From Octopus bimaculoides (Eukaryota): DNA of 63,855 nt. The notes below the pieces were generated by a model. The model did not search any database and was not told the DNA's origin. It saw nothing but the letters and a program-made list of their open reading frames with translations. The stretch covers positions 7,958,408-8,022,262 of the forward strand of contig NC_069004.1 in NCBI RefSeq assembly GCF_001194135.2, in the 5' to 3' direction. Of the stretch, positions 4,031 through 63,855 are shown in pieces. The translations under genes and the position numbers were made by a program. The number at the start of each line of letters is the position of its first letter. The first letter of the stretch is position 1.

Positions 4031-5222
4031 CATATGAATATATGAATATATATATGTATGTATATATATGTGTGTGTGAATATATGAATATATATATATA
4101 TAAATGATGAAGAACTAGGGACCTTCTGTTTTTATTTCCCGTGCTGTCGTATACTCAGTATGTGTTATGTCGTTTTTTTATTTACCATTAATTTGTTTTC
4201 ATTTATTCATAGAACGCAACGCGCACTAAATTTGTATTAATATTAATAAGCAGGTTTTTTACATACCCGTGTGACTCTCTCTCTCTCTCTATCTCTATCT
4301 CTCTCTCTCTCTCTTTCTCTTTCTCTTTCTCAGAAGAGGCATTGAACGCGCTGTTTTCTGATTGGCTGAAAATTCTGAAAATTGTCAGACATTCAACACC
4401 TGTAAGATTTTCGCAAAATATTTCGGAATAAATAACAAATTCGGATTCAGCGTCAAAAATTACATCTACATGATACGTTAATTTTTTTTTTAATTTCCCA
4501 CATGCAGTGACGAATACCACAAAGATCCTAGATTTTTTCTCGACTGTTAAGACCCCTTCTCATGGCAAACGACTCAATCAGCTCCTGACAACTGAGTCCA
4601 ACTCCAGTCTCGTAACGTGACTTAACCTCTAAGTGCAGAGCGAGTGTTTGTACGGAAAAGTGATGACGGACGAGGGTCCTGGTGCTTCGGTGTACTTGGA
4701 AATAGTAGTGCAGTTCATCTAAGAGACGACAAACCCTCACTTAAACATCTGCTGCCTTGTGGTGATACTCACGCATTATGGAGGTGGCGCTGAGGTTTCG
4801 GAAGTGAAATCCCGGTCTCTAAGACATTCCACCAGTGTTTCCGAATTGTTCCAGCAGCTTCTGCAACAAATCTGGTGCCAAATTAAACCTATTTTTTTTC
4901 CTCTGCCCCGTATTAAAAATGTACAGGTCAACGGAGACAACTTACACCTAGCATACAACCTGTACGGAGGACTTCACTTTACAAAGGACCCAGTAGCATC
5001 GCATCACTGCGATACCAGCTTTTGATTCATATTAACCAAGAGTGCACATGCGCAACAACAATTTAACTTGACATTCACGAAGGTTTCATTGTTGTAATGG
5101 CATTTGGGCGTCAACTATTTCCCAAGATTTATTCTCTGCTATTTCGAGATAATGATAACTCTACCTTTTGGTTTGTGGACATAGGCACACACACATAAAC
5201 ACAAATACTCAGGCACACACAC

Positions 5223-5270
<48 letters not shown>

Positions 5271-6084
5271 NNNNNNNNNNNNNNNNNNNNNNNNNNNNNN
5301 NNNNNNNNNNNNNNNNNNNNNNNNNNNNNNNNNNNNNNNNNNNNNNNNNNNNNNNNNNNNNNNNNNNNNNNNNNNNNNNNNNNNNNNNNNNNNNNNNNNN
5401 NNNNNNNNNNNNNNNNNNNNNNNNNNNNNNNNNNNNNNNNNNNNNNNNNNNNNNNNNNNNNNNNNNNNNNNNNNNNNNNNNNNNNNNNNNNNNNNNNNNN
5501 NNNNNNNNNNNNNNNNNNNNNNNNNNNNNNNNNNNNNNNNNNNNNNNNNNNNNNNNNNNNNNNNNNNNNNNNNNNNNNNNNNNNNNNNNNNNNNNNNNNN
5601 NNNNNNNNNNNNNNNNNNNNNNNNNNNNNNNNNNNNNNNNNNNNNNNNNNNNNNNNNNNNNNNNNNNNNNNNNNNNNNNNNNNNNNNNNNNNNNNNNNNN
5701 NNNNNNNNNNNNNNNNNNNNNNNNNNNNNNNNNNNNNNNNNNNNNNNNNNNNNNNNNNNNNNNNNNNNNNNNNNNNNNNNNNNNNNNNNNNNNNNNNNNN
5801 NNNNNNNNNNNNNNNNNNNNNNNNNNNNNNNNNNNNNNNNNNNNNNNNNNNNNNNNNNNNNNNNNNNNNNNNNNNNNNNNNNNNNNNNNNNNNNNNNNNN
5901 NNNNNNNNNNNNNNNNNNNNNNNNNNNNNNNNNNNNNNNNNNNNNNNNNNNNNNNNNNNNNNNNNNTATATATATATATATATATATTCTGCTTCAACAT
6001 ACAGATGAGGTGCCGGAGTAATTTATACGTTGCTTAGTATATATGGTTTGTGTTGTGTGTGTGTTTGTGTGTGTGTGTGTCTCT

Positions 6085-6435
6085 CTCCTATCCTGCTCAC
6101 AGCCACGCTTAGCACCTTACCTCTCATTTCAATTGCTGTAAACATCCGCAATGCCGACCGAGCAAAGAATCCCCTACAGTCAATCTCGACTGAGAAAAGC
6201 CATGCCTGCCATCCCTTCTCGCTGCAATCCTGCAGAAGGCTGTCATATCTGGCATGCTTCCGTTGTTGGGCCTCATCACACTCACTCCTCTTTCCACGGA
6301 ACTGTTAGCTCAATTACGATAATTTTATTGACATTTTCAGACGACAGGACCACATCTGGCTTCATATGGACAACATGGGGAACCTGCGATCTCTCCCAGA
6401 AGTCCACTTTCATATCCCATGATTGAGGTCCTTGC
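6085..6435 (-). mobile_element. HERO-like non-LTR retrotransposon, restriction-like endonuclease (RLE) domain fragment
   Basis: Minus strand, one frameshift: MKVDFWERSQVPHVVHMKPDVVLSSENVNKIIVIELTVPWKEE / CDEAQQRKHARYDSLLQDCSEKGWQAWLFSVEIDCRGF. This carries the PD...ELTVPW...RK.RY..GW...VE.GCRGF pattern of HERO-type RLE domains. Confidence 0.8.
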
Positions 6436-6735
6436 AGTAACCTATGCATTGTTTTTGTTGACTTTACAAGTTTCTCTCTCTAAAGGGGGATAATCAAAAG
6501 TATCCAGAATTTTGTAATATTATTCCATTTACTTAGTTTTACATGTTTAAACTTTTATCGCCTTCAAAATAGGGAGGGTTGACGATGAAGGAGTAGGTGG
6601 GTATGAGAGAAGAGATAAAGAGAGTAAGAGAGAAGAGAGAAGAGAGAAAGAGAGTAGGGGTGATGAGAAGTAGGAATGGAGAGAAGTAGGAGTCGGAGCA
6701 AGAGAGGAGAGGTGTATGGGAGGAATTAGGAGGGA

Positions 6736-6900
6736 GAGGGAGAGGAGAGAGAGGGAGAGGAGAGAGAGGGAGAGGAGAGAGAGGGAGAGGAGAGAGAGGG
6801 AGAGGAGAGAGAGGGAGAGGAGAGAGAGGGAGAGGAGAGAGAGGGAGAGGAGAGAGAGGGAGAGGAGAGAGAGGGAGAGGAGAGAGAGGGAGAGGAGAGA
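6736..6900. repeat. 15-bp pure-purine tandem repeat (GAGGGAGAGGAGAGA) x about 11
   Basis: Read directly; near-perfect copies. Confidence 0.95.
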
Positions 6901-8061: not shown

Positions 8062-8884
8062 NNNNNNNNNNNNNNNNNNNNNNNNNNNNNNNNNNNNNNN
8101 NNNNNNNNNNNNNNNNNNNNNNNNNNNNNNNNNNNNNNNNNNNNNNNNNNNNNNNNNNNNNNNNNNNNNNNNNNNNNNNNNNNNNNNNNNNNNNNNNNNN
8201 NNNNNNNNNNNNNNNNNNNNNNNNNNNNNNNNNNNNNNNNNNNNNNNNNNNNNNNNNNNNNNNNNNNNNNNNNNNNNNNNNNNNNNNNNNNNNNNNNNNN
8301 NNNNNNNNNNNNNNNNNNNNNNNNNNNNNNNNNNNNNNNNNNNNNNNNNNNNNNNNNNNNNNNNNNNNNNNNNNNNNNNNNNNNNNNNNNNNNNNNNNNN
8401 NNNNNNNNNNNNNNNNNNNNNNNNNNNNNNNNNNNNNNNNNNNNNNNNNNNNNNNNNNNNNNNNNNNNNNNNNNNNNNNNNNNNNNNNNNNNNNNNNNNN
8501 NNNNNNNNNNNNNNNNNNNNNNNNNNNNNNNNNNNNNNNNNNNNNNNNNNNNNNNNNNNNNNNNNNNNNNNNNNNNNNNNNNNNNNNNNNNNNNNNNNNN
8601 NNNNNNNNNNNNNNNNNNNNNNNNNNNNNNNNNNNNNNNNNNNNNNNNNNNNNNNNNNNNNNNNNNNNNNNNNNNNNNNNTATATATATATATATATATA
8701 TATATTATGTGTGTGTGTTTATATTGGAAAGGTTGCAAGACGCAACGAGATTTTAGAAAAATTAAAAAAAGGAATAAGTGGAAATTTTACCGGTGATTGT
8801 GTTGAATTATAAGGCACTAAAAGAGTATATAAATATTCACACACACATATATGTGTATGTGTATTTGTGTGTGTATGTGTGTGT

Positions 8885-11214: not shown

Positions 11215-11620
11215 TTCAGATTTCGGCACGAAGAAGGCCAGCAATTTTGCGTGAGAGGTTAAGTCAATTCCAGTGTTCAACTCCAGTTTTCAGCTGGTAC
11301 TTATTATATCGATCTCGAGGGTTGAAATGTAAAGTCGACCTTGGCGGAATTTGAACTCGGAGCGTAAAGCGCTGTAAGAAATGCTACTATGCATTTCGCC
11401 CGGAGTGCTAGCAACGTTCCAGCGAGCTCCCTACCTTAAAGCAAGCTTTATTATTGATATCAAATTTCGTACAAGGCCAGCAATTTTGGGGAGAGGACAA
11501 GTCAATTTCCTCGACACCAGTGCAAAACTGGTACTTGTATCGACTCGCCAAAGGATGAAATGCAAAGTTGACAGCATTTGAACTCAGAACGCAAAACTGA
11601 TGAAATGCCGTTAAGCATAT
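11215..11620 (-). mobile_element. Two adjacent copies of SINE family A
   Basis: Both contain 'tggtactt...atcga...aaag(tc/tt)gac...gaatttgaactc', the reverse complement of the + copy at 61708. Confidence 0.85.
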
Positions 11621-12476
11621 ACTGGCATATACTTGCACATGCCACCCCTTCCTACTTCCCCCTCTGTCCAACAACCTGACCGACTTCTAGTCTATTTCCT
11701 GTCCTCCACGTGGGCAATTTCTTATTCGCCATGCAGTAATCTCCAGCTAACTGTTAGCCATGTATCTATCAACATCAAACCACGACACCGCGTAACCTTC
11801 CTCGACCAATCGCAGCCCACCTTACCGTAATAACAATCAACTTCTGTCATTTAAATTTAAAATGGCTGACGACTAGCATCGCGCTTGAAACTCAAGATTA
11901 TCAACAAATTTGAATCAAGCTGTTTTGATCCATATATAACTGATTTATTCATTCAATGTCAGGTTTTGCACTAGATATTCTACCCTTGATAGTTTCCTCA
12001 ATCTAATTTTCTGAAATGCTAGTTTTAAAATGTGAACCATTGTCTTCGTTTTGTTCTGTGGTTTCCTTCTATTTACAATCATTTAATAGCATCCTGGAAT
12101 TATAGCGACATTTTTAAACACTGCTGAAATATTGTGTTTGCAAACCATAAAAATTTAATCAATTGTTACATCTATAAATGTTTAACACATCATATTCTCC
12201 ATAGTATGTATGATAAACATTTTATGGTCCATTCAATATTCTGGAAAATAATAACATGGAATACGTATGCAAATGTGAGTTTATACATGCATATATACAT
12301 AGATATAAATATACATACATACATAAATACATACATACACATATACATACATACACACATATATACATACATGCATACTTGCTCATACATATACACACAT
12401 ACATACAGCAAGGCTGCAAGCAATTTATGTCGCATTTGCTACTCTGGAATATGACCAGGTAGATATACATATATGC

Positions 12477-12520
<44 letters not shown>

Positions 12521-12856
12521 NNNNNNNNNNNNNNNNNNNNNNNNNNNNNNNNNNNNNNNNNNNNNNNNNNNNNNNNNNNNNNNNNNNNNNNNNNNNNNNN
12601 NNNNNNNNNNNNNNNNNNNNNNNNNNNNNNNNNNNNNNNNNNNNNNNNNNNNNNNNNNNNNNNNNNNNNNNNNNNNNNNNNNNNNNNNNNNNNNNNNNNN
12701 NNNNNNNNNNNNNNNNNNNNNNNNNNNNNNNNNNNNNNNNNNNNNNNNNNNNNNNNNNNNNNNNNNNNNNNNNNNNNNNNNNNNNNNNNNNNNNNNNNNN
12801 NNNNNNNNNNNNNNNNNNNNNNNNNNNNNNNNTATATATATATATATATATATATA

Positions 12857-13340
12857 TGGAGTAGTAGTTTTACGAAAATAGATCCATTTTCCATCTCTAT
12901 TTACAATTCGATGACCAAATCTTGAATCTCGAGAATTTGCCATCAGTTGCTTACAAATGTCCACACGCCGTTCAGCTTTATCATCGGTCAGTTCATTAGG
13001 GTCTTCTCGACATCGTCTGTTCACAAGGCTGAGTTTAAGGCGCTGTCCACTGATGGTACTGTGTGAAAGACCAAGTTCTACCAACAATGTAATAGTATTT
13101 GTGCTTGACTGTTGTTCAATTGTTTCCAGCGAGGCGTCATCTTCGACAACAGATCTCCCTGACCTTGGTTTGTCTTCGACGCAGGTCAGGTGTCACCTGC
13201 CTTCACTTGTCTGAACCAGTTTTGTGTTACACGTTTGTTGACTATTCCTAGACCTTCCGCATTATTAATTTCTTTTGCCGCTGACCTTGTACTCAGCTAT
13301 CCTTTCGAAAGGCAACATAAAATGGTTGTAATTGCAATTT
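12857..13340 (-). mobile_element. Mariner (Tc1/mariner) transposase pseudogene, N-terminal half; truncated at an assembly gap
   Basis: Minus strand with frameshifts: AAKEINNAEGLGIVNKRVTQNWFRQVKAGDT..EDKPRSGRS (HTH region), then DPNELTDDKAERRVDICKQL..RIVNRDGKWIYF (decayed WVPHEL and TGDEKW motifs). Confidence 0.88.
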
Positions 13341-17714: not shown

Positions 17715-17940
17715 TCTGTGTGGTACTTATTTTACCGAATCTGAAAGGATGAAAGGCAAAATCGACTCCGGCGGAAATTGAACTCAGAACGTAGTAAAGA
17801 CGGAGGAAATGTCGCTAAGCAACTTGCCCGGGGTGCTAACGATTCTGCTAGCTCGCCGCCTTAATAATAGTAAATATAATACTAATCCTTTCTACTATGG
17901 GCACAAGGCCTGAAACTTTGAGGGAGGAGACTAGTCGTTT
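17715..17940 (-). mobile_element. SINE family A copy plus the tail of a second copy
   Basis: 'aaaggatgaaaggcaaaatcgactccggcggaaattgaactcagaacg...gctagctcgccgcct'. Confidence 0.88.
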
Positions 17941-28318: not shown

Positions 28319-28689
28319 ATGTGCTATAATTATCAAGCTGTATGCCTTAATGTGCCATTTATACATACGAAGAACAAGAAGAAATCTCGTGAAACAGAGT
28401 TTATTTTAACGAGATACCTCTTGAAATCACCTGAGGAAACACATCTACACCTACGGATGCACCTAAACCAGATTTTCAATACCCCACTCGCGAGAGAACG
28501 GTGCTAGATGTGTCGAAACAATTGTAGTGCTCAATAGAGATTCTCATATCTTCCGTTGAAGTTACGGTTGAAATCATTGTTATTATTGACCACCAATGGG
28601 GGAAGATGGCACCTTTGGGCGTCTACCACTGTTTTCTTCCTGATCTATTTCTCTGCCCTCCCTTACGTTATCATCCATCCAACTACCCT

Positions 28690-32790: not shown

Positions 32791-34262
32791 CGATTTTTTC
32801 CCTCACACCCTTTTCGGTCGAAGAGCGTTAGCTCGAACGTCGAAGACTTTTCCATTTCTCCGTACGTCAAACAACTGATATACCTGCTTGTTCTACCCCC
32901 ACCTGCGTTTCACTTTTGTTTCCTGTTCATTTGAACTATATATNNNNNNNNNNNNNNNNNNNNNNNNNNNNNNNNNNNNNNNNNNNNNNNNNNNNNNNNN
33001 NNNNNNNNNNNNNNNNNNNNNNNNNNNNNNNNNNNNNNNNNNNNNNNNNNNNNNNNNNNNNNNNNNNNNNNNNNNNNNNNNNNNNNNNNNNNNNNNNNNN
33101 NNNNNNNNNNNNNNNNNNNNNNNNNNNNNNNNNNNNNNNNNNNNNNNNNNNNNNNNNNNNNNNNNNNNNNNNNNNNNNNNNNNNNNNNNNNNNNNNNNNN
33201 NNNNNNNNNNNNNNNNNNNNNNNNNNNNNNNNNNNNNNNNNNNNNNNNNNNNNNNNNNNNNNNNNNNNNNNNNNNNNNNNNNNNNNNNNNNNNNNNNNNN
33301 NNNNNNNNNNNNNNNNNNNNNNNNNNNNNNNNNNNNNNNNNNNNNNNNNNNNNNNNNNNNNNNNNNNNNNNNNNNNNNNNNNNNNNNNNNNNNNNNNNNN
33401 NNNNNNNNNNNNNNNNNNNNNNNNNNNNNNNNNNNNNNNNNNNNNNNNNNNNNNNNNNNNNNNNNNNNNNNNNNNNNNNNNNNNNNNNNNNNNNNNNNNN
33501 NNNNNNNNNNNNNNNNNNNNNNNNNNNNNNNNNNNNNNNNNNNNNNNNNNNNNNNNNNNNNNNNNNNNNNNNNNNNNNNNNNNNNNNNNNNNNNNNNNNN
33601 NNNNNNNNNNNNNNNNNNNNNNNNNNNNNNNNNNNNNNNNNNNNNNNNNNNNNAGATAGATAGATAGATAGACAGGCAGACAGAAAAACGGACAAACAGA
33701 CGGAGAAAGGGACAGATACATACATACACACACGCATACTTGCATAAATACGTACATAGAGAAAGAGAGAGAGATAACAAGCATACAGTGCTAATAGGAA
33801 TCAGATGGTGATACTTCACATACTATCATAGATGTCAAATTTAATTTGGAATAATTTTATTGCGATGAATATAAAATTATATCCTGTTGGCTCACCTGCT
33901 TTCGTTATCAACATGACAATAACTACCAGCTCAAGTTTACTCCGCAATAGAAATGTACCACTATTGATACCTAAATCTACACAAACATCAGTTTGCATAG
34001 AAATACGTTTACTTGTCTTCCTTTATGGCTGTATCAAAAAGTTTTGTATTGTTATAGCTTCTTCAGTTTTAGTTCTACATTATGCTGTATGCCAAATATA
34101 AAATTCTCACGTTGACAGTTTGCTTGCTATTAGGTCAACTATAAGAACAAATAGCATTTGTTGTCGAAGGCGTATAAGTCTGAAATATAATTTATAACTC
34201 ACTTAAATTTATTGTTGTATTAAGTTATAAACACCTATGGATACTTATTTTACAGTGATGTG

Positions 34263-44962: not shown

Positions 44963-45308
44963 TTATTTGTTGTATTTAGTTCCTTAAGATGTACACTTAT
45001 GTTAAAACATATTTTGTTGTAGTTTGGGCGGGTTGTTACGTCAATAATATATACACACGCTAGTTTTATTTCACGTCTTTTATTATTTGTGAATTTGCTC
45101 AAGATTTAATCAATTAACAAACCGATTGTCTGCTTAATCGCTGAGGTCATACCTGAAGTATTCCTGGAGTGGAGCGCGCAGCATATTATTGATGAGGTCG
45201 GAAAGGGCAATGACAGGACTTTGACAAATCTAGCTGGATGATTGATTGAGCGAACGATTAATGAAGCAAATGATTAGTTAATTGGTTAAACGTTTATCTT
45301 ATTGACAA

Positions 45309-45337
45309 ATAATGATAATAATAATAATAATGATAAC

Positions 45338-45429
<92 letters not shown>

Positions 45430-45443
45430 TAATAATAATAATG

Positions 45444-45477
<34 letters not shown>

Positions 45478-45494
45478 TAACAATAATAATAATG

Positions 45495-45568
<74 letters not shown>
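45309..45568. repeat. About 260-bp (AAT)n array with interspersed GAT/AAC
   Basis: Read directly. Confidence 0.97.
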
Positions 45569-45872
45569 CATGAGGTAGAGAATAGGAAGCTAGACAGAGT
45601 GCTAATTGAGAAAGAAAGCAAACGATCCTGGATCATAGATATAGCATGCCCAGCTAACAACAAGGAATGCGATAAGGAAGAAAGAAAAGTCGAGAGATAT
45701 GACAGGTTAGCTTGGGAGAAGAAACAGTTGCTGTCGACGAAAAAGGTGGTAGTAGTACCAATAATTGTCGGAGCCCTGGGAACAGTGAGTAAAATAATTT
45801 TGAGAAGTACATGAAACAAATAGGAGCTGCAATAAGGGTGGAGCACTTGCAGAAAACAGCACTGCTTGGAGT
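45569..45872 (+). mobile_element. R4/Dong-like RLE endonuclease fragment
   Basis: HEVENRKLDRVLIEKESKRSWIIDIACPANNKECDKEERKVERYDRLAWEKKQLLSTKKVVVVPIIVGALGTVSK...IRVEHLQKTALLG follows the (R)PD..IID...P.D...KE.EK..KY...PI..GALG pattern. Confidence 0.85.
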
Positions 45873-46462
45873 CTAATACGAACCGTACATTTAGTGCAAT
45901 GAGCGTTTCTTGATTAGCCTCAGGGCTCATGTTATAATGTTATACTGAGTTGGGTATAGTTTATCGTATACATAACCGGAATATCTTTCTGCCTGTACTT
46001 TGGTACCTGCGTATACGTTCTCCTATTTTTGTTCTGTACACACTCTTTTGAACACAACCTGGTGCCTTACCGTTTAAGTGCCTCATTCACTGCAACCCTG
46101 ATCTATTATATATGTGTATGTATATATATTGCTTTTCGGTTTGTGTAATTGGGTACGTTAGTAATTTATTACAGCACATTAGCTGGTTGAAGTATTAAAT
46201 ATTAAGAGAAGTAAGAGAAGAGGTTTAGGTTGAAGGTAAAGCAAGGAAACAACAAACTGAAGTGTAAAAGGAAACGAGAAATCATACTGCTTATTAGTAC
46301 AAATTCTATTGAACTCGCTGCTAAGTTGGTGTTCAGTGAAGCGAAGAATTATTAACATAATGTCCATCACTAATTGAATCTCGCTTTTGTTGTTCAGGTT
46401 TTGAACAATCGCAATGGTGAAATAAGTACGCGCACACACATATACACTCAGACATTGACAGG

Positions 46463-50779: not shown

Positions 50780-51369
50780 ATGTACCTATTTATCGTACAT
50801 ATATGTTTACATATATTGCAATTCACACACACACACACACATACACACACACATACACACACACAAACATACACACACACACATACACATACACCCACAC
50901 ACACATACGAAAGTTATTTAATTTGACATTATCCTCTTATCTCATGCTGTCGTTCATTCCAAATCGCAAATCAAAAGAACAGAACAAATCATAAAGTAAA
51001 TCCACAAAAGAAAATAAATATCACAAAGCTATCCATTCTTCGTGCTTCATCGATTAATTCTTTTCTAGATTCAGATATCGATACGCTATCACTCAGCTCC
51101 AATCAGCTGTCAATGGGACACAATGGATAACATATACACAATGTGCCAACATAGTTCAATAAATAATCCTTGACAATTCCTATCGTACGTCTTCTTTAAA
51201 CTCCAATGCATACATACATACATACATGCATACATACGCACATATATACATACATGCGTAGATACATACATTCATATATGTGCGTGCGTGTGTGCGTATG
51301 TGTGTGTGAGCATGTGCATGTGTTTTTTTTTCTTTTTTCACAGAGATAATATGTATGTTTCCAAACATA

Positions 51370-51531
51370 ACTACATCGACTCCAGTGCGTAACTGGTACT
51401 TATTTAAACGACCCCGAAAGGATGAAAAGCTAAGTGGACCTCGGCGGAATTTGTACTCAGAACGTAGAGGCAGGCGAAATACCGCTAAGCATTTCGCCCA
51501 ACGTGCTAACGATTCTGCCAGCTCGCCGCCT
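51370..51531 (-). mobile_element. SINE family A copy
   Basis: 'gaccccgaaaggatgaaaagctaagtggacctcggcggaatttgtactcagaacg...ccagctcgccgcct'. Confidence 0.9.
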
Positions 51532-51607
51532 GTAATGCACTTTTATATTAATCAGGGAAGATCCGATACACTATAATAACGATAGTAGTAGTATTANNNN
51601 NNNNNNN

Positions 51608-52652: not shown

Positions 52653-53274
52653 TTCTATGCCACGCTACGCATAAAAACAATATAGTAAATTGAAAGATAA
52701 CCGAACACATTTTAGTAGCGTAAAAAATGTTAAACTTTTACACGGAAAAAAACGTCAGTGCACATTTTGGCTCAGTCGCCTGATTGACTGATTAATTGAT
52801 AGAAAGATAGACATACAGCCAGACAGACAGTAACACATCGTATATAGTCAAGGAAAACCATATTTTTTGGCCTAGAAATTTGCAATTATATATTTGTCAG
52901 TCGCTATTATACTTTTTACTCTACAATTCTTTATAAAATTCGCATAAAAAAGCGTGGTATAGATTTCTTAAGTTCATTATCAAATAAGCAGTGCAATTAC
53001 TAACGTATAATTAGCGTGGCATGCATCTAACCGTATTATCTATTATATAAGCTAGACTGCATGCCTTTACATTTATCGTTTCATGGTTGGCAGGGGGTGC
53101 AAGTGTGTACTTATGAATGTGTGTGTGTGCGCGTGGCATATTCCTCCAGGAATATTTCTCGCTTGAAGTAATGAGAATTCTTGTTAATGCCGAAACTGAC
53201 ATTACCAATCAATCATTCGAGAAATGTTAGAATTTCAAATGCGCAGAAAGCTACAGAAAAGAAATATCTGCGCG

Positions 53275-53605
53275 GTGGTGGTGATGATGAGGAGGAGGAG
53301 GACGACGACGACGACGTGGACGACGAGGAGGACGAGGAGGACGATGAGGACGAGGAGGACGAGCAGGAGGAGGACGAGGAGGACGACGAGCAGGAGGAGG
53401 ACGACGAGCAGGAGGAGGACGATGGCGATGACGACGACGATGACGACGATTATGATGAGGATGGTGATGATGAAGACGTTGATGATAAAAGCGACCACGA
53501 AGACGATGATGATGCTTGTGATGATGATGATGAGGAGGAGGAGGAGGAGGAGGAGGAGGAGGAGGAGGAGGAGGAGGAGGAGGAGGAGGAGGATGGTGAT
53601 GGTGA
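53275..53605. repeat. Compound GAN trinucleotide low-complexity tract (reads poly-Asp/Glu on +)
   Basis: GAT/GAC/GAG runs including a pure (GAG)n of about 20 units. No flanking domain or convincing splice context. Confidence 0.85.
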
Positions 53606-54184
53606 AGGAGTCGTAGTATATGTTGTATAAACTTATAATTATGGCGGACAGCAATGATTACGAGAATCTGCATGGTATATTTACACACGGGTAATTTATA
53701 GCGGTATATTCAGTGCTGAAATTAATGAACAACTTGATTTTTTTTTTTTTGTAGGAATTTTAATGATTATTTTTTATCATTATTATTATTATTATTTGAA
53801 ACACTTCAATTTTTGTTCTTACATTATTTCCAATTTAAAAACCACAGTAAACATCTATGCTTTTTTTTTTTGTATGAAAAAAATTAAAACCTGCAGTTGT
53901 ATATTCGTAACCTTTATAATTTTTGTTTTATCACCCGTGCCATTTAAAGTGCATTAAGCACCTAATTAGAGATAAAAGTTCAGCATGGATATGCAATACT
54001 CCAACGAGAGTAACTTTAGCAATGGTTACTATGGTCAAGTGTAATGGATACGAGTAAAGATACCAGGAGTAATCCATGAGAGATTACATGATCGTATTTA
54101 TTTAGAAGTAGATGTGTTTTGTTGCGTGTACATAGAGCTTTCGTGATCCACTACGATTCATAAGGCGGGAACTGGTTTCCATAA

Positions 54185-54460
54185 CTGGTTTCAAATTCTG
54201 GCACAAGGCAGGAAAATTCTGGAGAAGGGGTAAGTCGATTTCATCGACCCCAGTATTTAAATGGTACTCATTTTATCGGCTCCGGACGGATGAACTGTAA
54301 AGTCAATCTTGGCGGAATTTGAACTCAGAACGTAAAGACGGACGAAATATCGCTAAGCATTTCGCCCAGCGTGCTAAAGACTGTGCCACCTCGCCGCCTT
54401 GAATATATAATAAGTATTTCACCCGGCGGCGTGCTAACGATTCTGCTAGCTTACCACCTT
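54185..54460 (-). mobile_element. SINE family A copy plus a head fragment
   Basis: 'gtcgatttcatcgaccccagt...ggcggaatttgaactcagaacgtaaagacggacgaaatatcgctaagcatttcgcc'. Confidence 0.9.
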
Positions 54461-55894: not shown

Positions 55895-56085
55895 TTGGCG
55901 CTAGGTCAGCAATTTTGGGAAGGGGAAAGTCAATTATACTTTCCAGTGTTCAAAGTGGTGTTTATTCTATCGACCTCGGAAGGATGAAAGACAAAATCAA
56001 CCTCGGCGGAATTTGAACTCAGAACTTGAGGACGGAGGAAATGCTCCGAAGTATTTTTCCCGGTGTGCTAACAATTCTGTCATGT
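55895..56085 (-). mobile_element. SINE family A copy
   Basis: 'tcgacctcggaaggatgaaagacaaaatcaacctcggcggaatttgaactcagaac'. Confidence 0.88.
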
Positions 56086-56404
56086 CATCACCTATCCATA
56101 AAACTTTCAGAAATCTCATTGTATTCAAAATAAAGCCAGCTAGAATACCAGAATGGTTGTGCTAAGGAAGAACTTAGAGGTGGCAGAATATTATAGTCGT
56201 TGGAACGTTGGAGAAATTGCTTTGTGATAACCAAGTTCATGAGCAGTATTGAACAGTATTACGCCAGTAACAGAGAAATGAGCTGGTTTTATTTTATTTT
56301 TTTATCATTCGTCAATGGATTAATTATTTAACTGATCAACAAATGGATTGTTTAATTAATCATCCGATTTATCAATCAAGCAGTAATGTTTGTGGTGCAG
56401 ATTA

Positions 56405-57904: not shown

Positions 57905-58340
57905 TGACTGGGTTGGTCTCATCCATAGACGTGTCTTGGATCGACTGACTTCATTTAGACCTTAAGACTTTCAAACCGAGATCATCATCACCATTCAAAT
58001 TGTAGAATCATGCACGTCTGACTTGCCATAGAGACAAACAGATACCTGCCTTACACCAACAAATCATCTCTCAAAACACGTTTCATTATCCCTTCTCAGC
58101 CATATCTAATTGCTGGTTCTCTCAACAGTTGATTTCATTTTTTTCCACGTATGTTGCTTCACGATGGTTCACGCTAGAAAATAAGAGCAACCGCCTAAAT
58201 CTGGTTCCTTTAAACTTCTACATCCAGCGTCTACAAAAAAAGTTACTGCACTCTAGCCAGCACTTTTACAGTCTTCCAGTAGCAACTCATAACGGCTCGT
58301 CTCTCCTAACCTGAGCAGCATCAGTATTATCCTCGTTCGG
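57905..58340 (-). mobile_element. Second HERO-like RLE C-terminal fragment with 3' flank
   Basis: EDNTDAAQVRR / RYELLLEDCKSAG*SAVTF / VDAGCRSL...KSTVERTSN*IWLRR is a decayed RY..L..C...GW...PVEVGCRG...AE..S.W.W.KR pattern. Confidence 0.68.
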
Positions 58341-58387
58341 ATCACTTAATTCAACAAGATGCACTAGAGCAGTTTAACTATTTATTT

Positions 58388-59050
58388 AGTTAATCCAGCG
58401 TGAGATATAAAACATTTTCAAGTTTCTAAATTCATAAAATATAGAGTTGTCTGATGGCAATATCGATTTCGAAAACAAAATAAGTAATTTAAATTAATAG
58501 ATAAATCGATGTTGTTAAAGGGTTTGTTAATTAAAGAAAAAGGCAGAAAATCACCAATTAACATGGTTCTAAAGTTTGTCACAGTTAGGAGGGCGAGTGT
58601 TAAAGGTTGAACACCAATTTTAATAATTTCAATGAGAAAGAGAAATGGAATTAAAAATTAATGTGTTCGAAGTGATAGTAGAGAAGCTAAGGATGATTTT
58701 ATATCGTTTCGATAGGAAGATGTCATTAATCTTAATCACAAGAGGAAGGAAAGAAAGGGAGGATAATATAGCTAAATGACTCGCAGTTTTAAATACACAA
58801 GGATTTAGCCCTAAAGGTTTTAAATTAATAATTATTAGAAATAATGAAATAATGAGGAATCTTCCTATATTATTACTAAAACATCGGTAATTTATGTATT
58901 TATAATTCGCATAGTAATTATTGAAGAAAAGTTAAGCAATGATGAGAAGATTCAAAGTGATGTAGTGATAAAGAAAAGGGATTAGAGTGTTAAGATTCAG
59001 ACAAGAGAGTGATGATAAAAGGTTGTTGAGTTATGATCGTCATGACACAT
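58388..59050 (-). pseudogene. atp6: NUMT: mitochondrial ATP synthase subunit 6 pseudogene
   Basis: Mito-code islands in the expected order and spacing: DDHNSTTFYHHSLVWIL, TSLWIFSSLLNF, SLFLMIINLKPLGLNPCVFKTASHL, LIPFLFLIEIIKIGVQPLTL, YFVFEIDIAISQLYI. Confidence 0.85.
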
Positions 59051-59107
59051 TAGAAAGCAAAATGGAGAAAATAATATAATTCAACTTAAAAGATATAATC
59101 GAAGCAT
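59051..59107 (-). pseudogene. atp8: NUMT: 5' fragment of atp8
   Basis: MLRLYLLSWIMLFSPF resembles MPQLSPLNW.MLF and lies immediately after the trnD remnant. Confidence 0.55.
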
Positions 59108-59170
59108 ATAAAAACACTATATTATAGTAATTAAAATTTGATATATTTCTGCTTATTTACTAAATTTATA
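59108..59170 (-). pseudogene. trnD: NUMT: mitochondrial tRNA-Asp remnant
   Basis: About 63 bp between the cox2 stop and the atp8 ATG, with acceptor-like ends and a residual 'ttacta...tagt' T-arm. The anticodon position appears mutated. Confidence 0.5.
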
Positions 59171-59180
59171 TATTTGTTAT

Positions 59181-59770
59181 TTAGTTATTTTTCAATAGTC
59201 AGTTATTAAATGCATTTATATTTTCAATTTCAAGTGTAATAGATATGAATGAATGGTTAGCTCCACAAATTTCAAAATATTGACCATAAAATATGTCTCA
59301 GCAGTTAGAGAATAGATATAGTTGATTTCAACGACCTGGAAGTGCATTTACTTTATCTCTTCGAGAGGAAACGGTTCAAGAACGGATTACGTTTGCGAAT
59401 AAAATGATTATTCGATTGTTTGCTTTCATTGGAATAATTAAGTGAGGGCTAGTAGGTAGGCGGAATAATAATCCTTCATTTAATTCATTTAGAGGGATTA
59501 TATAGGAATTCTTGAAAGTTTAGTATTCATACCTTCTGTATCATTGATGGCCTTATCGTTTAATTATAAGTAAAGGGTAAATCGATTCAATTAAATATAG
59601 TTTAAGGGAAATTAATGCGAGAAATGGGAGACTCATTCTAAGAATAATTGTTCAAAACGTCACAGTTTCTTGGCTTTCAGTAATTATAAGTGAATTATAA
59701 TTAATCTTAAGAAATGTAGGAATAAGAATTAAAAAAAATTAGTGATTAAACGAACAATATTAACACTTAT
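59181..59770 (-). pseudogene. cox2: NUMT: cytochrome c oxidase subunit II pseudogene, main 3' part
   Basis: SLMITESQETVTFWTII / FLALISLKLYLIE..GHQWYSSYEY / NVIRSWTVSSRSDKVNALPGRWNQL...FYGQYFEICGANHSFMSITLE...NWLLKNN*. The EICGANHSFM motif is unmistakable; frameshifts and lost CuA ligands indicate decay. Confidence 0.93.
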
Positions 59771-59976
59771 AAATATATATATATATATATATATTAATCC
59801 CGAAATTGATTCAATATAGAGATAACGCATTAAAAAATATCCGTTAGCTTGCTTTCCTCGATTTCGAGAGAACGTGTATTCATAGTGATGTATATTGTAA
59901 TGTGGTGATTGACGATTTAAGGTCTATTTCTCAGCATATTGGCATAGAACTTTTTTCTTTTGCCCTTATTTATAAT

Positions 59977-60011
<35 letters not shown>

Positions 60012-60052
60012 ATGTATGTATACATACACGTATGTATATATATATATATGCA

Positions 60053-60090
<38 letters not shown>

Positions 60091-60093
60091 GAT

Positions 60094-60151
60094 GCGTGGC
60101 TAAGTGGTTAGGGTATTCGGCTCACGATCATAAGATTGTGGGTTCAATTTC
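60094..60151 (+). mobile_element. tRNA-like SINE head (family C) running into a gap
   Basis: 'gcgtggctaagtggttagggtattcggctcacgatcataagattgtgggttcaattt' has A-box and B-box-like segments. Confidence 0.75.
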
Positions 60152-60437
60152 NNNNNNNNNNNNNNNNNNNNNNNNNNNNNNNNNNNNNNNNNNNNNNNNN
60201 NNNNNNNNNNNNNNNNNNNNNNNNNNNNNNNNNNNNNNNNNNNNNNNNNNNNNNNNNNNNNNNNNNNNNNNNNNNNNNNNNNNNNNNNNNNNNNNNNNNN
60301 NNNNNNNNNNNNNNNNNNNNNNNNNNNNNNNNNNNNNNAAATGTAGGAATAAGAATTAAAAAAAATTAGTGATTAAACGAACAATATTAACACTTATAAA
60401 TATATATATATATATATATATTAATATATATATTACT

Positions 60438-60655
60438 AAAGCCGGCGAAATGGCAGAATTTTTAGCACGCCGGGCAAAAGGCTCAGCGGCATTACTCTTC
60501 TGTCTCTATGCTCTGAGCTGAAATGTCACCGCGGTCGATATTGCCTTTCATCCTTTTGGGGTCGATAAAATAAAACACCAGTACTGGTGTCGATGTAACT
60601 GACGTACCACCTATCTGGAAATTGCTGGCCTTGTCCCAATACTTAAAACCAATAT
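60438..60655 (+). mobile_element. SINE family A inserted within the cox2 NUMT
   Basis: 'gccggcgaaatggcagaa...gtcgatattgcctttcatccttttggggtcgataaa'. It separates cox2 5' from cox2 3'. Confidence 0.88.
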
Positions 60656-60659
60656 ATAT

Positions 60660-60762
60660 TATTAAATGGTAAAATAGTAACAATAATTATGGAGTGATGA
60701 TTGAAAAAATGAATTGCTCTACAAGTGGAGAATTTGCATCTTGAAATCCTCGTTACTTCCAT
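60660..60762 (-). pseudogene. cox2: NUMT: cox2 5' fragment
   Basis: GFQDANSPLVEQFIFFNHHSMII corresponds to the canonical GFQDA.SP.MEQLIFFHDH.M. Confidence 0.88.
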
Positions 60763-61165
60763 TAGGTTTTTAATGGAATAAATAAAGCTCCTGTTTCCAT
60801 TTGAAGTCAACTGGTAAACGGTTGTTTCATTCTAATGATGTATTTGTGGGATTTGATAATAGTTCGTTTCCTCATATGAAAGATATAAAAAAATATGATC
60901 AATGTTGAAAGTAATGAAAGAATATTTCATTTGGTATATGAATCAGAGTAGTCTTAATATCATCATGTCATGGTATTTCTGCTAATCTTAAAATGTATAT
61001 GGAAAGATAACGTTATAAATATTATAAACATAAATATTCTCACTTAAAGATAATATCAGTTCAACACCTTCAACGGCATGCTCTATTTAAGCTATTTAAG
61101 AAATCATAATTGCAATGAAAATAATAATTATTTTGACATTGAATAAAATAAGTATTCATCATTGT
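60763..61165 (-). pseudogene. cox1: NUMT: cox1 3' fragment
   Basis: HF / LAEMP* / DYSDSYTKWN (from HFLGLAGMPRRYSDYPD.YT.WN) and SLEWNNRLPVDF / ETGAL C-terminus abutting cox2. Upstream of about 61010 only weak HDTYY/HFHY remnants remain. Confidence 0.8.
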
Positions 61166-61707
61166 TTTTAAAATATAATTTTCTTAACTACTATAATTAA
61201 TCTCTGCGTTCTTATAATTTCTAATAACTCTATATCAAGCAATTTTAAATTCATATTTCTAATAGTCTTCTGAACACTAAAAACAGATAACTACTTAAAA
61301 TAAGATAAAAATCAAATGCTATTATATCAATCTAAATATAGATTTTTCTTCCTCTTTCAGTCATATTCTAAACGCTAATAATAGAGAAAAACTAGTAATA
61401 TCACAAGTACTTTTTATACCATCGGTAAAACAGTAATTTCATTCAAACAAAGTACCATGTTCTGCAATACAAACCTTCCAAATAACGGCTGCAAAACACA
61501 AATGTATTATTGATATCGTTATAAACGCATCAGCCTCTCCTATGTTTTCATATACTATACTTTTAAACTATATCTTGCCACACTATGTAAATAGATATAC
61601 GAATATCTATGTAAATAGACATACGAAATGCCAGTAAGCCTTTTAGTCTGGCAAACGTTTCCACCAGCTCACCGCTGTGAAAGCGTAATGATTATTAACT
61701 TATAATA

Positions 61708-62045
61708 TAAGGCGGCGAGTTGGCAGAAACGTTACACGCTGGGCGAAATGCTTAGCGGTATTTCGTCTGTCTTCACGTTCTGAGTTCAAATTCCGCGGAG
61801 GTCAACTTTGCCTTTCATCCTTTCGAGGTCGATAAATTAAGTACCAGTTGTTCACTGGGGTCGATCTAATTTATTTCAGCCCTCTCCAAAGATTTTGGGC
61901 CTTGTGCCTAGACTAGAAAAGAATATAGGGCGGCGAGCTGGTAGAATTGTTAGCATGCTAGACAAAATGCTAAGCGACATTTCGTCCACCTTACGTTCTG
62001 AGTTTAAATTCTGTCGAAGACGATTTTTGCCTTTCATCCTTTCGG
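61708..62045 (+). mobile_element. Two tandem copies of SINE family A (first near full length)
   Basis: 'aaggcggcgagttggcagaaacgttacacgctgggcgaaatgcttagcggtatttcg...ttgcctttcatcctttcgaggtcgataaattaagtaccagttg'. A second head starts at about 61927. Confidence 0.92.
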
Positions 62046-62297
62046 AAAAGTTACATCGCCTAACTGTTATCTTAACGAGTTGTGTCTATTTATCACCCGA
62101 TGAGATACATCTGCACCGCCGGATGCTCCTGAACCAGTCGTTGAGTGTCCTACCCGTAAGGGATTGATAGGAAATGTGTCGAAACAATTGTCGTGATTAA
62201 TAATAAATTCTCGAATATTCCATCTTCTGTCTTTCATTTGCCATATATATGTATACATATACACAAATATGTGTATGTGTGTGAGCGTGTGTGTATA

Positions 62298-62330
<33 letters not shown>

Positions 62331-62332
<2 letters not shown>

Positions 62333-62812
62333 CAATTTGCCTCAAGAAATCAAGAAGTGGTGGAACTCACATAATATAAATACACAACAAAGGTATCAAT
62401 AAACTGATAATAGGGTTATAATTAATTATTCATCCACACAAAGAGAAGCTTCGTCCGTTAAGCATCTCATAAATTAAATTTCCATCACAAAATAATGCTC
62501 GGGAATACAATCCATGGTGCAACATTATTAAGTCCCTCACAACCCACAATAATCCTCCTGCCAATCCTGCTAATATAATCCCTATGTGCCTAATAGAAAA
62601 ATGAGCAGTTAATCTCATATCACTTAGCCATAAACAAATAATTGAAGACAACAACCTTTGCAAATAAATAACCATTATATTAAAAACTTAAACATTTAAA
62701 CAAACTCATAAAACTCATTACCCCACGTCCACCTATATTTTACTCTACTCAGACCACAATTATTGAACCTATAATACGAGCTTGTACATGAGCCTTAGCT
62801 ATCTTTTATATT
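62331..62812 (-). pseudogene. nad4: NUMT: NADH dehydrogenase subunit 4 central fragment
   Basis: Mito code: AKAHVQARIMGSM (PKAHVEAP..GSM), GGRGVMSF (LKLGGYG), IICLWLSDMSLTAHFSISHMG (CLRQ.D.KSLIAYSS..HMG), HGLYSRALFCDGNLIYE..GRS, MWVPP; all in the correct order. Confidence 0.88.
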
Positions 62813-62819
62813 TTTACTT

Positions 62820-62990
62820 GTTTCACAATGTGGCCATGCTGGAGAAATTCGAGTAGAACGAATCAACACCAGTATTTCATTTTTGCTTAAAGCTAAGTAC
62901 TTATTCTATAAGCCCCATTTTGTCGAACCGCTAAGTTACGAGGAGGTAAACACACCAACACTGGTTGTCAATCTTTGGCGGGACACACAC
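62820..62990 (-). mobile_element. SINE family B tail fragment bounding the NUMT
   Basis: 'tggccatgctggag...aagtacttattctat...gaaccgctaagttacg...aaacacaccaacactggttgtcaa'. Confidence 0.8.
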
Positions 62991-63516: not shown

Positions 63517-63855
63517 TCATTTAAAATGCAGAGATGCCTATAATAGGACGTCTACTCGCTAGAAATAGCAGCAAAAGACTACATACCACAAAAATTAGGG
63601 ATAATTTCGAAAGGAAATGAAAAATAAAAACTTTTACCAATCTATATTCTGTACCATGGTTTCAAGTCAATTTTAGTAAGATAAAGATTATGGTACAGAA
63701 TATAGATAAAGATTATGGTACAGAATATAGATTGGTAAAAGTTTTTATTTTTCATTTCCTTTCGAAATTATCCCTAATTTTTGTGGTATGTAGTCTTTTG
63801 ATGCTATTTCTAGCGAGTAGACGTCCTATTATAGGCATCTCTGCATTTTAAATGA
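63517..63855. mobile_element. Foldback element or long palindrome: 141-bp arms with 1 mismatch and a 57-bp spacer; truncated by the window end
   Basis: 63517-63657 is the reverse complement of 63715-63855 except gcagc versus gcatc. The spacer carries a direct duplication of 'ataaagattatggtacagaatatag'. Confidence 0.9.

What the first reader, a model, noticed from the sequence alone, without database searches (positions are those of the whole stretch)
58388..62812. Old compound mitochondrial insertion (NUMT) of about 4.4 kb that the ORF track misses
Seen in sequence: under the invertebrate mitochondrial code the minus strand carries colinear, decayed cox1(3')-cox2-trnD-atp8(5')-atp6 from about 61.1 kb down to 58.4 kb, plus a nad4 block at 62.3-62.8 kb. 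Conserved cox2 CuA ligands are mutated (VIHSW to VIRSW, GQCSE to GQYFE), and stops and frameshifts are frequent, so it is non-functional and old. Established knowledge: cox1-cox2-trnD-atp8-atp6 is the Octopus mitochondrial order. Inference: this is a molecular fossil of an ancestral octopod mitochondrial sequence and a possible source of false COI/COII barcode signals.
Basis: partly seen in the sequence, partly recalled or inferred. Interest (0 to 1): 0.75.

Follow-up and report, generated by a model that had tools for sequence, protein, structure and literature searches.

The report
Old rearranged octopus mitochondrial insertion (NUMT)

Summary
Window 58436-62802 holds about 2.7 kb of mitochondrial-derived DNA in five blocks, each about 68-72% identical to Octopus mitogenomes (blastn E 1e-37 to 1e-84; tblastn up to 8e-52; Pfam COX2 1.7e-29).

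- cox1(3')-cox2-trnD-atp8(5')-atp6, plus nad4.
- Loss of two CuA ligands.

What it missed:
- A trnF-nad5(3') block at 61015-61646.
- The cox1-atp6 block is inverted relative to nad5/nad4, joining mt 4346 to mt ~6229 inside one contig.
- Three SINE-like nuclear repeats lie inside the fossil, one with a 15-bp target-site duplication in cox2.

The assembly gap is not in mitochondrial sequence. It sits in a ~950-bp interruption of cox2. The 87 bp to its right exactly copy 59712-59798, which probably reflects assembly or haplotype redundancy.

Second codon positions are 16-17% changed in all blocks, against 1.4% between two functional Octopus mitogenomes. This implies one event and neutral decay of about 0.19 substitutions per site, roughly 80 My at a published octopus rate.

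Trees place the source inside core Octopodidae (98% bootstrap), not at the base of Octopoda. The Folmer COI region is absent, so barcode risk is low. Verdict: a new member of a known kind, of low interest.

The parts
58436..59042 (-). atp6 pseudogene (aa ~10-217). It may continue weakly to ~58395.
   Evidence: blastn 69.5% to mt 5562-6188. tblastn E 1e-30. 4 in-register stops and 7 frame-shifting indels. The end alignment fades after 58437.
59043..59050 (.). Deletion scar. About 120 bp of mtDNA is missing here (atp8 3' two thirds plus the first ~9 codons of atp6).
   Evidence: Alignment of the cox2-end/trnD/atp8/atp6-start region. There is a gap between the blastn blocks at mt 5435 and mt 5562.
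59051..59107 (-). atp8 5' remnant (first ~19 codons).
59108..59179 (-). trnD remnant, no longer recognised as a tRNA.
   Evidence: Aligned to mt trnD 5310-5378. ARAGORN -mt finds no tRNA here.
59177..59694 (-). cox2 3' piece (aa ~51-228) with CuA ligands lost (H>R in VIHSW, C>Y in GQCSE).
   Evidence: blastn 70.6%. tblastn E 8e-52. Pfam COX2 1.7e-29. Translations.
59695..60650 (.). Interruption of cox2, where only ~30 mt bases are unaccounted for. It contains:
- 78 unassignable AT-rich bp.
- A (TA)n tract.
- 353 bp of unique sequence with microsatellites, ending in a tRNA-like head at 60089-60151.
- The assembly gap at 60152-60338.
- An exact 87-bp copy (60339-60425) of 59712-59798.
- A SINE-like repeat at ~60441-60651.
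   Evidence: Sequence. Self-blast shows the 100% 87-bp duplicate. The copies diverge right after the (TA)n tract. The 78 bp score no better than shuffles against cox2.
60441..60651 (+). SINE-like interspersed repeat inserted into cox2. It is flanked by a 15-bp target-site duplication: atatatattactaaa at 60426-60440 and atatatattattaaa at 60652-60666.
   Evidence: Five related copies elsewhere in the window, 70-75% identical. The duplication was read from the sequence, and its right copy aligns to mt cox2 ~4735-4748.
60651..60767 (-). cox2 5' piece (aa 2-41).
   Evidence: blastn block mt 4346-4748. tblastn aa 2-41. Alignment.
60774..61007 (-). cox1 3' end (aa ~422-510 of 510).
   Evidence: blastn 68.6%. 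Translations show YSDSYTKWN, NTSLEWNNRLPVDF and METGALFI. 10 frame-shifting indels.
61008..61014 (.). Inversion junction, where mt ~4346 (cox1) abuts mt ~6229 (end of atp6). It lies inside one contig.
   Evidence: Adjacent blastn blocks of opposite orientation. The nearest gaps are at 60338 and at the window end.
61015..61100 (-). atp6 3' tail plus trnF remnant. This is the best preserved stretch, 81% identical to O. vulgaris.
   Evidence: blastn L001 11603-11683 -> 61026-61100, 81.5%. Alignment. Not called by ARAGORN.
   Evidence: blastn 68.8%. tblastn E 7e-19.
61693..62046 (+). Two adjacent copies of the same SINE-like repeat family (61693-61927 and 61922-62046). They lie where ~1.4 kb of mtDNA (nad5 5' two thirds, trnH, nad4 3' end) is missing.
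   Evidence: Up to 9 related copies in the window, 73-86% identical.
62067..62221 (.). Another dispersed repeat, with a copy at 28401-28554.
62236..62330 (.). (TG/CA)n and (TA)n microsatellite at the edge of the nad4 block.
   Evidence: Sequence.
62331..62802 (-). nad4 middle part (aa ~173-340).
   Evidence: blastn 67.9% to L002 and 72.1% to O. bimaculoides. tblastn E 1e-31. Pfam Proton_antipo_M 1.5e-9.

Best explanation
This is a nuclear mitochondrial DNA segment (NUMT). One stretch of mtDNA at least ~4.5 kb long, running from the 3' end of cox1 through cox2, trnD, atp8, atp6, trnF, nad5 and trnH into nad4, escaped from the mitochondrion of an early member of the core Octopodidae. It was ligated into a nuclear chromosome break (inferred: non-homologous end joining, the established route for NUMTs). 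The cox1-atp6 part ended up inverted relative to the nad5-nad4 part, either at integration or by a later inversion.

Since then it has decayed as neutral nuclear DNA. The decay comprises:
- About 0.19 substitutions per site.
- About 60 small indels, mostly deletions.
- A ~120-bp deletion and a ~1.4-kb deletion.
- Microsatellite growth.
- At least three SINE-like insertions.

It has no function. What is shown: the mitochondrial origin, the nuclear setting, the loss of coding capacity, the equal decay of all blocks and the placement inside Octopodidae. What is inferred: a single integration event, the end-joining mechanism and the absolute age (~80 My, perhaps 50-120 My).
For: - Origin: five blocks match Octopus mtDNA at 68-72% identity, E down to 1e-84.
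- Nuclear setting: a SINE-like repeat with a 15-bp target-site duplication sits inside cox2, and two more copies lie between nad5 and nad4. The same repeat family occurs at 11.3, 17.7, 51.4, 54.3 and 56.0 kb of the window.
- Dead: 10 stops under code 5, about 46 frame-shifting indels, and CuA ligands H>R and C>Y.
- Relaxed constraint: mismatch by codon position is .243/.171/.384. Between functional O. vulgaris-type and O. bimaculoides mtDNA over the same columns it is .084/.014/.301.
- Indels: 48 deletions against 12 insertions.
- One event: second-position decay is .164.173 and .160 in blocks A, B and C. The end of A (mt ~6188-6228) and the start of B (mt ~6215-6229) are adjacent in mtDNA. 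B and C are colinear and in the same orientation.
- Age and source: where the two Octopus mitogenomes differ, the NUMT matches one 155 times, the other 130 times and neither 59 times. The NUMT falls inside core Octopodidae with 81% (COX2), 90% (NAD4) and 98% (COX2+NAD4) bootstrap.
- Rate: 2.4e-9 per site per year, from PMC7656900.
Against: - No read data, so nuclear depth and the junctions rest on the assembly alone.
- The left end (58395-58436) and the junction at 61008-61030 are AT-rich and cannot be placed to the base.
- The trees are NJ on 150-350 decayed codons with a very long NUMT branch. The three-gene set, which has missing data, gives only 71%.
- The rate is a single published estimate, and second-position differences include some alignment error and some change that predates the insertion.
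- The interruption around the gap is unresolved.
Confidence: 0.9

Rival explanations
1. Two or three independent NUMT insertions (cox1-atp6; trnF-nad5; nad4) landed next to one another at different times, rather than arriving as one fragment.
For: The blocks differ in orientation and are separated by repeats. Compound NUMTs built from several fragments are known in general (PMC2820518, listed).
Against: Second-position decay is equal in all three blocks (.164/.173/.160). The mt breakpoint of A and the start of B are the same place in mtDNA, within ~40 bp. B and C are colinear and in the same orientation. COX2 and NAD4 give the same placement.
Confidence: 0.12
2. The inverted arrangement or the whole locus is an assembly artefact. 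Either true mitochondrial or contaminant mitochondrial contigs were scaffolded into nuclear sequence, or a contig was mis-oriented at the gap.
For: The scaffold has 20 gaps. The contig to the right of the gap begins with an exact 87-bp copy of sequence 440 bp to the left of the gap, so some local redundancy is likely.
Against: The sequence is ~30% diverged from every Octopus mitogenome tested, with stops and frameshifts, so it is not the organelle genome. The A/B junction at 61008-61014 lies inside one contig. The cox2 5' piece (right of the gap) and 3' piece (left of the gap) are in the right order and on the same strand, which supports the scaffold join. SINE-like repeats shared with the rest of the window are embedded in the locus.
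Confidence: 0.04
3. A single colinear insertion was followed much later by a separate ~2.6-kb chromosomal inversion of the cox1-atp6 part. In this reading the inversion is not a feature of the integration.
For: The same data as for the main explanation. Inversions are common in old non-coding DNA. This is a variant of the main explanation rather than a competitor.
Against: One inversion breakpoint would have to coincide, to within ~7-20 bp, with the original left edge of the NUMT (mt 4346 abuts mt 6229 with no nuclear DNA between them). Breaking and flipping at integration would explain this more simply.
Confidence: 0.3

Closest known systems
NUMTs (nuclear copies of mitochondrial DNA) as surveyed across sequenced genomes (Hazkani-Covo et al. 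2010, PMC2820518; seen)
   Same: A fragment of mtDNA sits in a nuclear chromosome. It is non-functional under both genetic codes, decays neutrally, is interrupted by nuclear repeats, and contains multi-gene stretches that keep the mitochondrial gene order.
   Different: The host lineage is an octopus. Searches of the held paper library found no catalogue of octopus NUMTs. This one is old (~30% diverged) and internally inverted.
Rearranged or compound NUMTs and post-insertion NUMT rearrangements, as in insects with many numts (e.g. Orthoptera, PMC4204883)
   Same: Non-colinear pieces of mtDNA lie side by side.
   Different: Here the two pieces share one mitochondrial breakpoint and show the same decay. 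This points to a single molecule that was broken and flipped, not to repeated insertions.
Suspected COI pseudogenes/NUMTs in octopod barcoding (Tremoctopus violaceus study, PMC8749848)
   Same: An octopod mitochondrial pseudogene in nuclear DNA.
   Different: That case concerns the COI barcode region and recent, similar copies. This locus lacks the barcode region and is far too diverged to be mistaken for the real gene.

Membership tests
NUMT | Significant similarity to the mitochondrial genome of the host lineage, with mitochondrial gene order kept within blocks. | tested here: met
   blastn and tblastn against O. vulgaris-type and O. bimaculoides mtDNA. The best protein hits are Octopus COX2. 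The gene order was checked on real mtDNA.
NUMT | Located in nuclear DNA, that is flanked or interrupted by nuclear sequence. | tested here: met
   SINE-like repeats lie inside the locus, one with a 15-bp target-site duplication made of cox2 sequence, and the same family occurs elsewhere in the window. The flanks have no mitochondrial similarity. This rests on the assembly only.
NUMT | Loss of coding capacity and relaxed selective constraint. | tested here: met
   10 stops under code 5, frame-shifting indels and loss of CuA ligands. Second-position change is 17%, against 1.4% between functional mitogenomes.
NUMT | Nuclear (not organellar) copy number, with reads that span the junctions. | not testable with these tools
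   No read data are available.
Genuine mitochondrial genome sequence (organelle contig in the assembly) | Intact reading frames under code 5, recognisable tRNAs, and near identity to the species' mitogenome. | tested here: not met
   Stops and frameshifts. ARAGORN -mt finds neither trnD nor trnF. Identity is 68-72% to all Octopus mtDNAs tested.
Functional nuclear gene derived from a transferred mitochondrial gene | An open reading frame under the standard code. | tested here: not met
   94 stops in one frame under table 11. No ORF of 110 aa or more overlaps 58.4-62.8 kb.

The most novel reading that the evidence does not exclude
The insertion is about 60-100 My old and is shared at the orthologous site by all core Octopodidae (Octopus, Amphioctopus, Hapalochlaena, Cistopus, perhaps Callistoctopus), but is absent from Enteroctopus, Eledone and Bathypolypus. 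If so, it would be a near homoplasy-free clade marker. It would also be a slowly evolving snapshot of an early octopodid mitogenome, usable to root and calibrate the saturated mitochondrial trees of octopods. The inversion state across species would show whether NUMTs can be flipped at integration.
Probability: 0.4. Interest if true: 0.35.

Novelty: new member of a known kind. Interest (0 to 1): 0.2.

Why it matters
It matters mainly for annotation and housekeeping:
- The 4.4 kb should be masked as a NUMT so it is not taken for mitochondrial contamination or for genes.
- The assembly around 59.7-60.4 kb needs checking.

It has modest evolutionary use:
- If it is shared among genera, it is a rare-genomic-change marker for core Octopodidae.
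- It would then also be a roughly 80-My-old outgroup-like copy of five mitochondrial genes.

It does not threaten COI barcoding.

Tried and rejected
It was redone with code-5 translations. Only COX2 and Proton_antipo_M passed; cox1 and atp6 are too frameshifted for a single-frame scan.
- ARAGORN, in mitochondrial and standard modes, found no trnD or trnF. Its only call (60089-60164, 'Val') is the tRNA-like head of a repeat running into the gap.
- Rfam at gathering thresholds over the whole window found nothing.
- I suspected that the 78 bp at 59695-59772 was a second copy of cox2 codons ~20-35 (tblastn overlap of aa 29-41). Local alignment scored at the mean of 500 shuffles, so the idea was rejected.
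- P0005 and P0006 (COX2 calls from Logan/ENA contigs) appear to have been translated with a wrong code. L002 DNA is 97% identical to O. vulgaris, yet its called protein clusters apart. They were not used for the conclusions.
- ATP6 homologues did not make the top 120 of the concatenated-query search, so there is no ATP6 tree.
- I tried to find a real nuclear gene or the host species from ORFs. Only low-complexity ORFs turned up. A mariner-like guess for 12425-13087 got no Pfam support.
- No paper in the held library describes octopus NUMTs.
Full report
**What is there**

The window is AT-rich, full of microsatellites, and broken by 20 assembly gaps. I translated 58300-62900 on the minus strand under the invertebrate mitochondrial code. 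The translation shows clear COX2, COX1 C-terminus, ATP6 and NAD4 motifs. Pfam confirms COX2 (E 1.7e-29) and Proton_antipo_M (E 1.5e-9). A search with the cox2 translation returned Octopus vulgaris and O. mimus COX2 as best hits (64-65% identity). Other octopods followed at 61% and Vampyroteuthis at 55%.

**Reference mitogenomes**

- Part of O. vulgaris OY720585.1 (L001).
- A 13-kb contig that is 97% identical to it (L002).
- O. bimaculoides NC_029723.1 (L006).

**Map**

blastn of L002 against the whole window gives five blocks and nothing else:

| Block | L002 mt coordinates | Window coordinates | Strand | Identity |
|---|---|---|---|---|
| A1 | 4346-4748 | 61007-60651 | - | 68.6% |
| A2 | 4778-5435 | 59694-59051 | - | 70.6% |
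| A3 | 5562-6188 | 59042-58436 | - | 69.5% |
| B | 6229-6833 | 61015-61601 | + | 68.8% |
| C | 8326-8816 | 62334-62801 | + | 67.9% |

tblastn under code 5 agrees and extends block B to 61646 (nad5 aa 379-564, E 7e-19). The locus therefore holds:

- cox1 (last ~89 codons).
- cox2, in two pieces.
- trnD.
- The first ~19 codons of atp8.
- atp6.
- The atp6 tail plus trnF.
- The last third of nad5.
- The middle of nad4.

That is about 2.7 kb of mitochondrial sequence spread over 4.4 kb.

**Rearrangement**

In mtDNA, nad5 and nad4 lie on the strand opposite to cox1-atp6. Here all the genes read on the window's minus strand. Block A is therefore inverted relative to B and C.

The junction at 61008-61014 joins mt ~4346 to mt ~6229. 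The other end of A stops at mt ~6188-6228, so the end of A and the start of B are neighbours in mtDNA. The junction lies inside a contig (gaps listed), so it is not a scaffolding error.

The simplest reading is that one mtDNA fragment broke near the end of atp6 and one piece was flipped at integration. A later inversion is possible. It would need one breakpoint to coincide with the edge of the insert.

**The assembly gap (tested first, as asked)**

The gap at 60152-60338 is not inside mitochondrial sequence. cox2 is split between mt ~4748 (window 60651) and mt ~4778 (window 59694). The ~950 bp between these points holds:

- 78 AT-rich bp that match cox2 no better than shuffled sequence does.
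- A (TA)n tract.
- 353 bp of unique sequence, ending in a tRNA-like head that runs into the gap.
- The gap itself.
- An exact 87-bp copy of 59712-59798 that starts at the first base after the gap.
- A SINE-like repeat with a 15-bp target-site duplication (atatatattactaaa / atatatattattaaa).

The right copy of that duplication is cox2 sequence.

The two cox2 pieces are in the right order and on the same strand, which supports the scaffold join. Reading-frame continuity is moot, because the gene already has four stops. A 100% identical repeat inside a locus that has otherwise decayed by ~30% most likely reflects assembly or haplotype redundancy. That last point is an inference.

**Nuclear and dead**

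- Three copies of one ~200-bp repeat family lie inside the locus. Relatives at 70-86% identity occur at five other places in the window.
- There are 10 in-register stops under code 5 and about 60 small indels (48 deletions, 12 insertions), most of them frame-shifting.
- Larger deletions remove ~120 bp (atp8/atp6) and ~1.4 kb (nad5 5' part, trnH, nad4 3' end).
- VIHSW>VIRSW and GQCSE>GQYFE are confirmed. By established knowledge of the CuA site, these remove a His ligand and a Cys ligand.

**Constraint and age**

| Comparison | Position 1 | Position 2 | Position 3 |
|---|---|---|---|
| NUMT vs mtDNA | .243 | .171 | .384 |
| Two functional Octopus mitogenomes, same columns | .084 | .014 | .301 |

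Where both mitogenomes agree, second positions are changed at .164 in block A.173 in B and .160 in C. The three blocks are therefore the same age.

Jukes-Cantor correction of .165 gives about 0.19 substitutions per site. At the published 2.4e-9 per site per year (PMC7656900) this is roughly 80 My. The error is wide, because the rate is a single estimate and the alignments carry some noise.

Where the two mitogenomes differ, the NUMT matches the vulgaris type 155 times, bimaculoides 130 times and neither 59 times. The insertion is therefore not a recent event in either lineage.

**Source lineage**

NJ trees with bootstrap place the NUMT inside core Octopodidae, with no stable sister species:

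| Data set | Bootstrap support |
|---|---|
| COX2 (201 codons) | 81% |
| NAD4 (150 codons) | 90% |
| COX2+NAD4 | 98% |
| Three genes, with missing NAD5 data | 71% |

The fossil is therefore of an early octopodid mitogenome, not an ancestral octopod one. The same paper dates the Hapalochlaena-O. bimaculoides split at ~59 My, which fits an insertion before that split.

**Known or new**

NUMTs are a well-described class (PMC2820518). I found no paper describing octopus NUMTs in the held library. One Tremoctopus barcoding study suspects them. This locus is a new member of a known kind.

The barcode concern is weak. Only cox1 nt ~1265-1533 is present, outside the Folmer region. cox2 is split and ~30% diverged.

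**Verdict**

The finding is ordinary and of low interest.

Noticed in passing
window 63517-63657 and 63715-63855: A near-perfect inverted repeat: 141-nt arms, 99% complementary, with a 57-nt spacer that itself holds a short tandem duplication. It runs to the very end of the window. It could be a foldback or MITE-like element, or an assembly palindrome.
   Followed up: partly
window 59712-59798 and 60339-60425: An exact 87-bp direct duplicate. The second copy starts at the first base after the assembly gap, and the copies diverge right after a (TA)n tract. It looks like contig-end or haplotype redundancy.
   Followed up: partly
window 60089-60151: A tRNA-like sequence (ARAGORN -mt calls it 'Val', running into the Ns) at the left edge of the gap. 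It is probably the head of a different SINE whose body lies in the gap. No other copy of 50 bp or more occurs in the window.
   Followed up: partly
window 11277-11618, 17721-17884, 51369-51552, 54200-54415, 55943-56086: Further copies of the ~200-bp SINE-like repeat family that is also inserted in the NUMT, 70-86% identical to one another. It has no Rfam or ARAGORN tRNA match, so its classification (possibly a cephalopod SINE) is untested.
   Followed up: partly
whole window, 20 gaps (e.g. 1722-2132, 5271-5966, 32944-33653): Most assembly gaps are bordered by (TA)n or (CA)n microsatellites. This suggests a short-read assembly that breaks at simple repeats, and the gap lengths are only estimates.
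   Followed up: no
window 45286-45930 and 53181-53690: Long trinucleotide-type low-complexity tracts that read as poly-Leu/poly-Asn and poly-Asp/Glu ORFs in several frames. They cause spurious weak tblastn hits to hydrophobic mitochondrial proteins.
   Followed up: no
window 12425-13087 (-): An ORF fragment whose N-terminal 77 aa reminded me of a mariner-type transposase. Pfam gave no match, so this is unconfirmed.
   Followed up: partly
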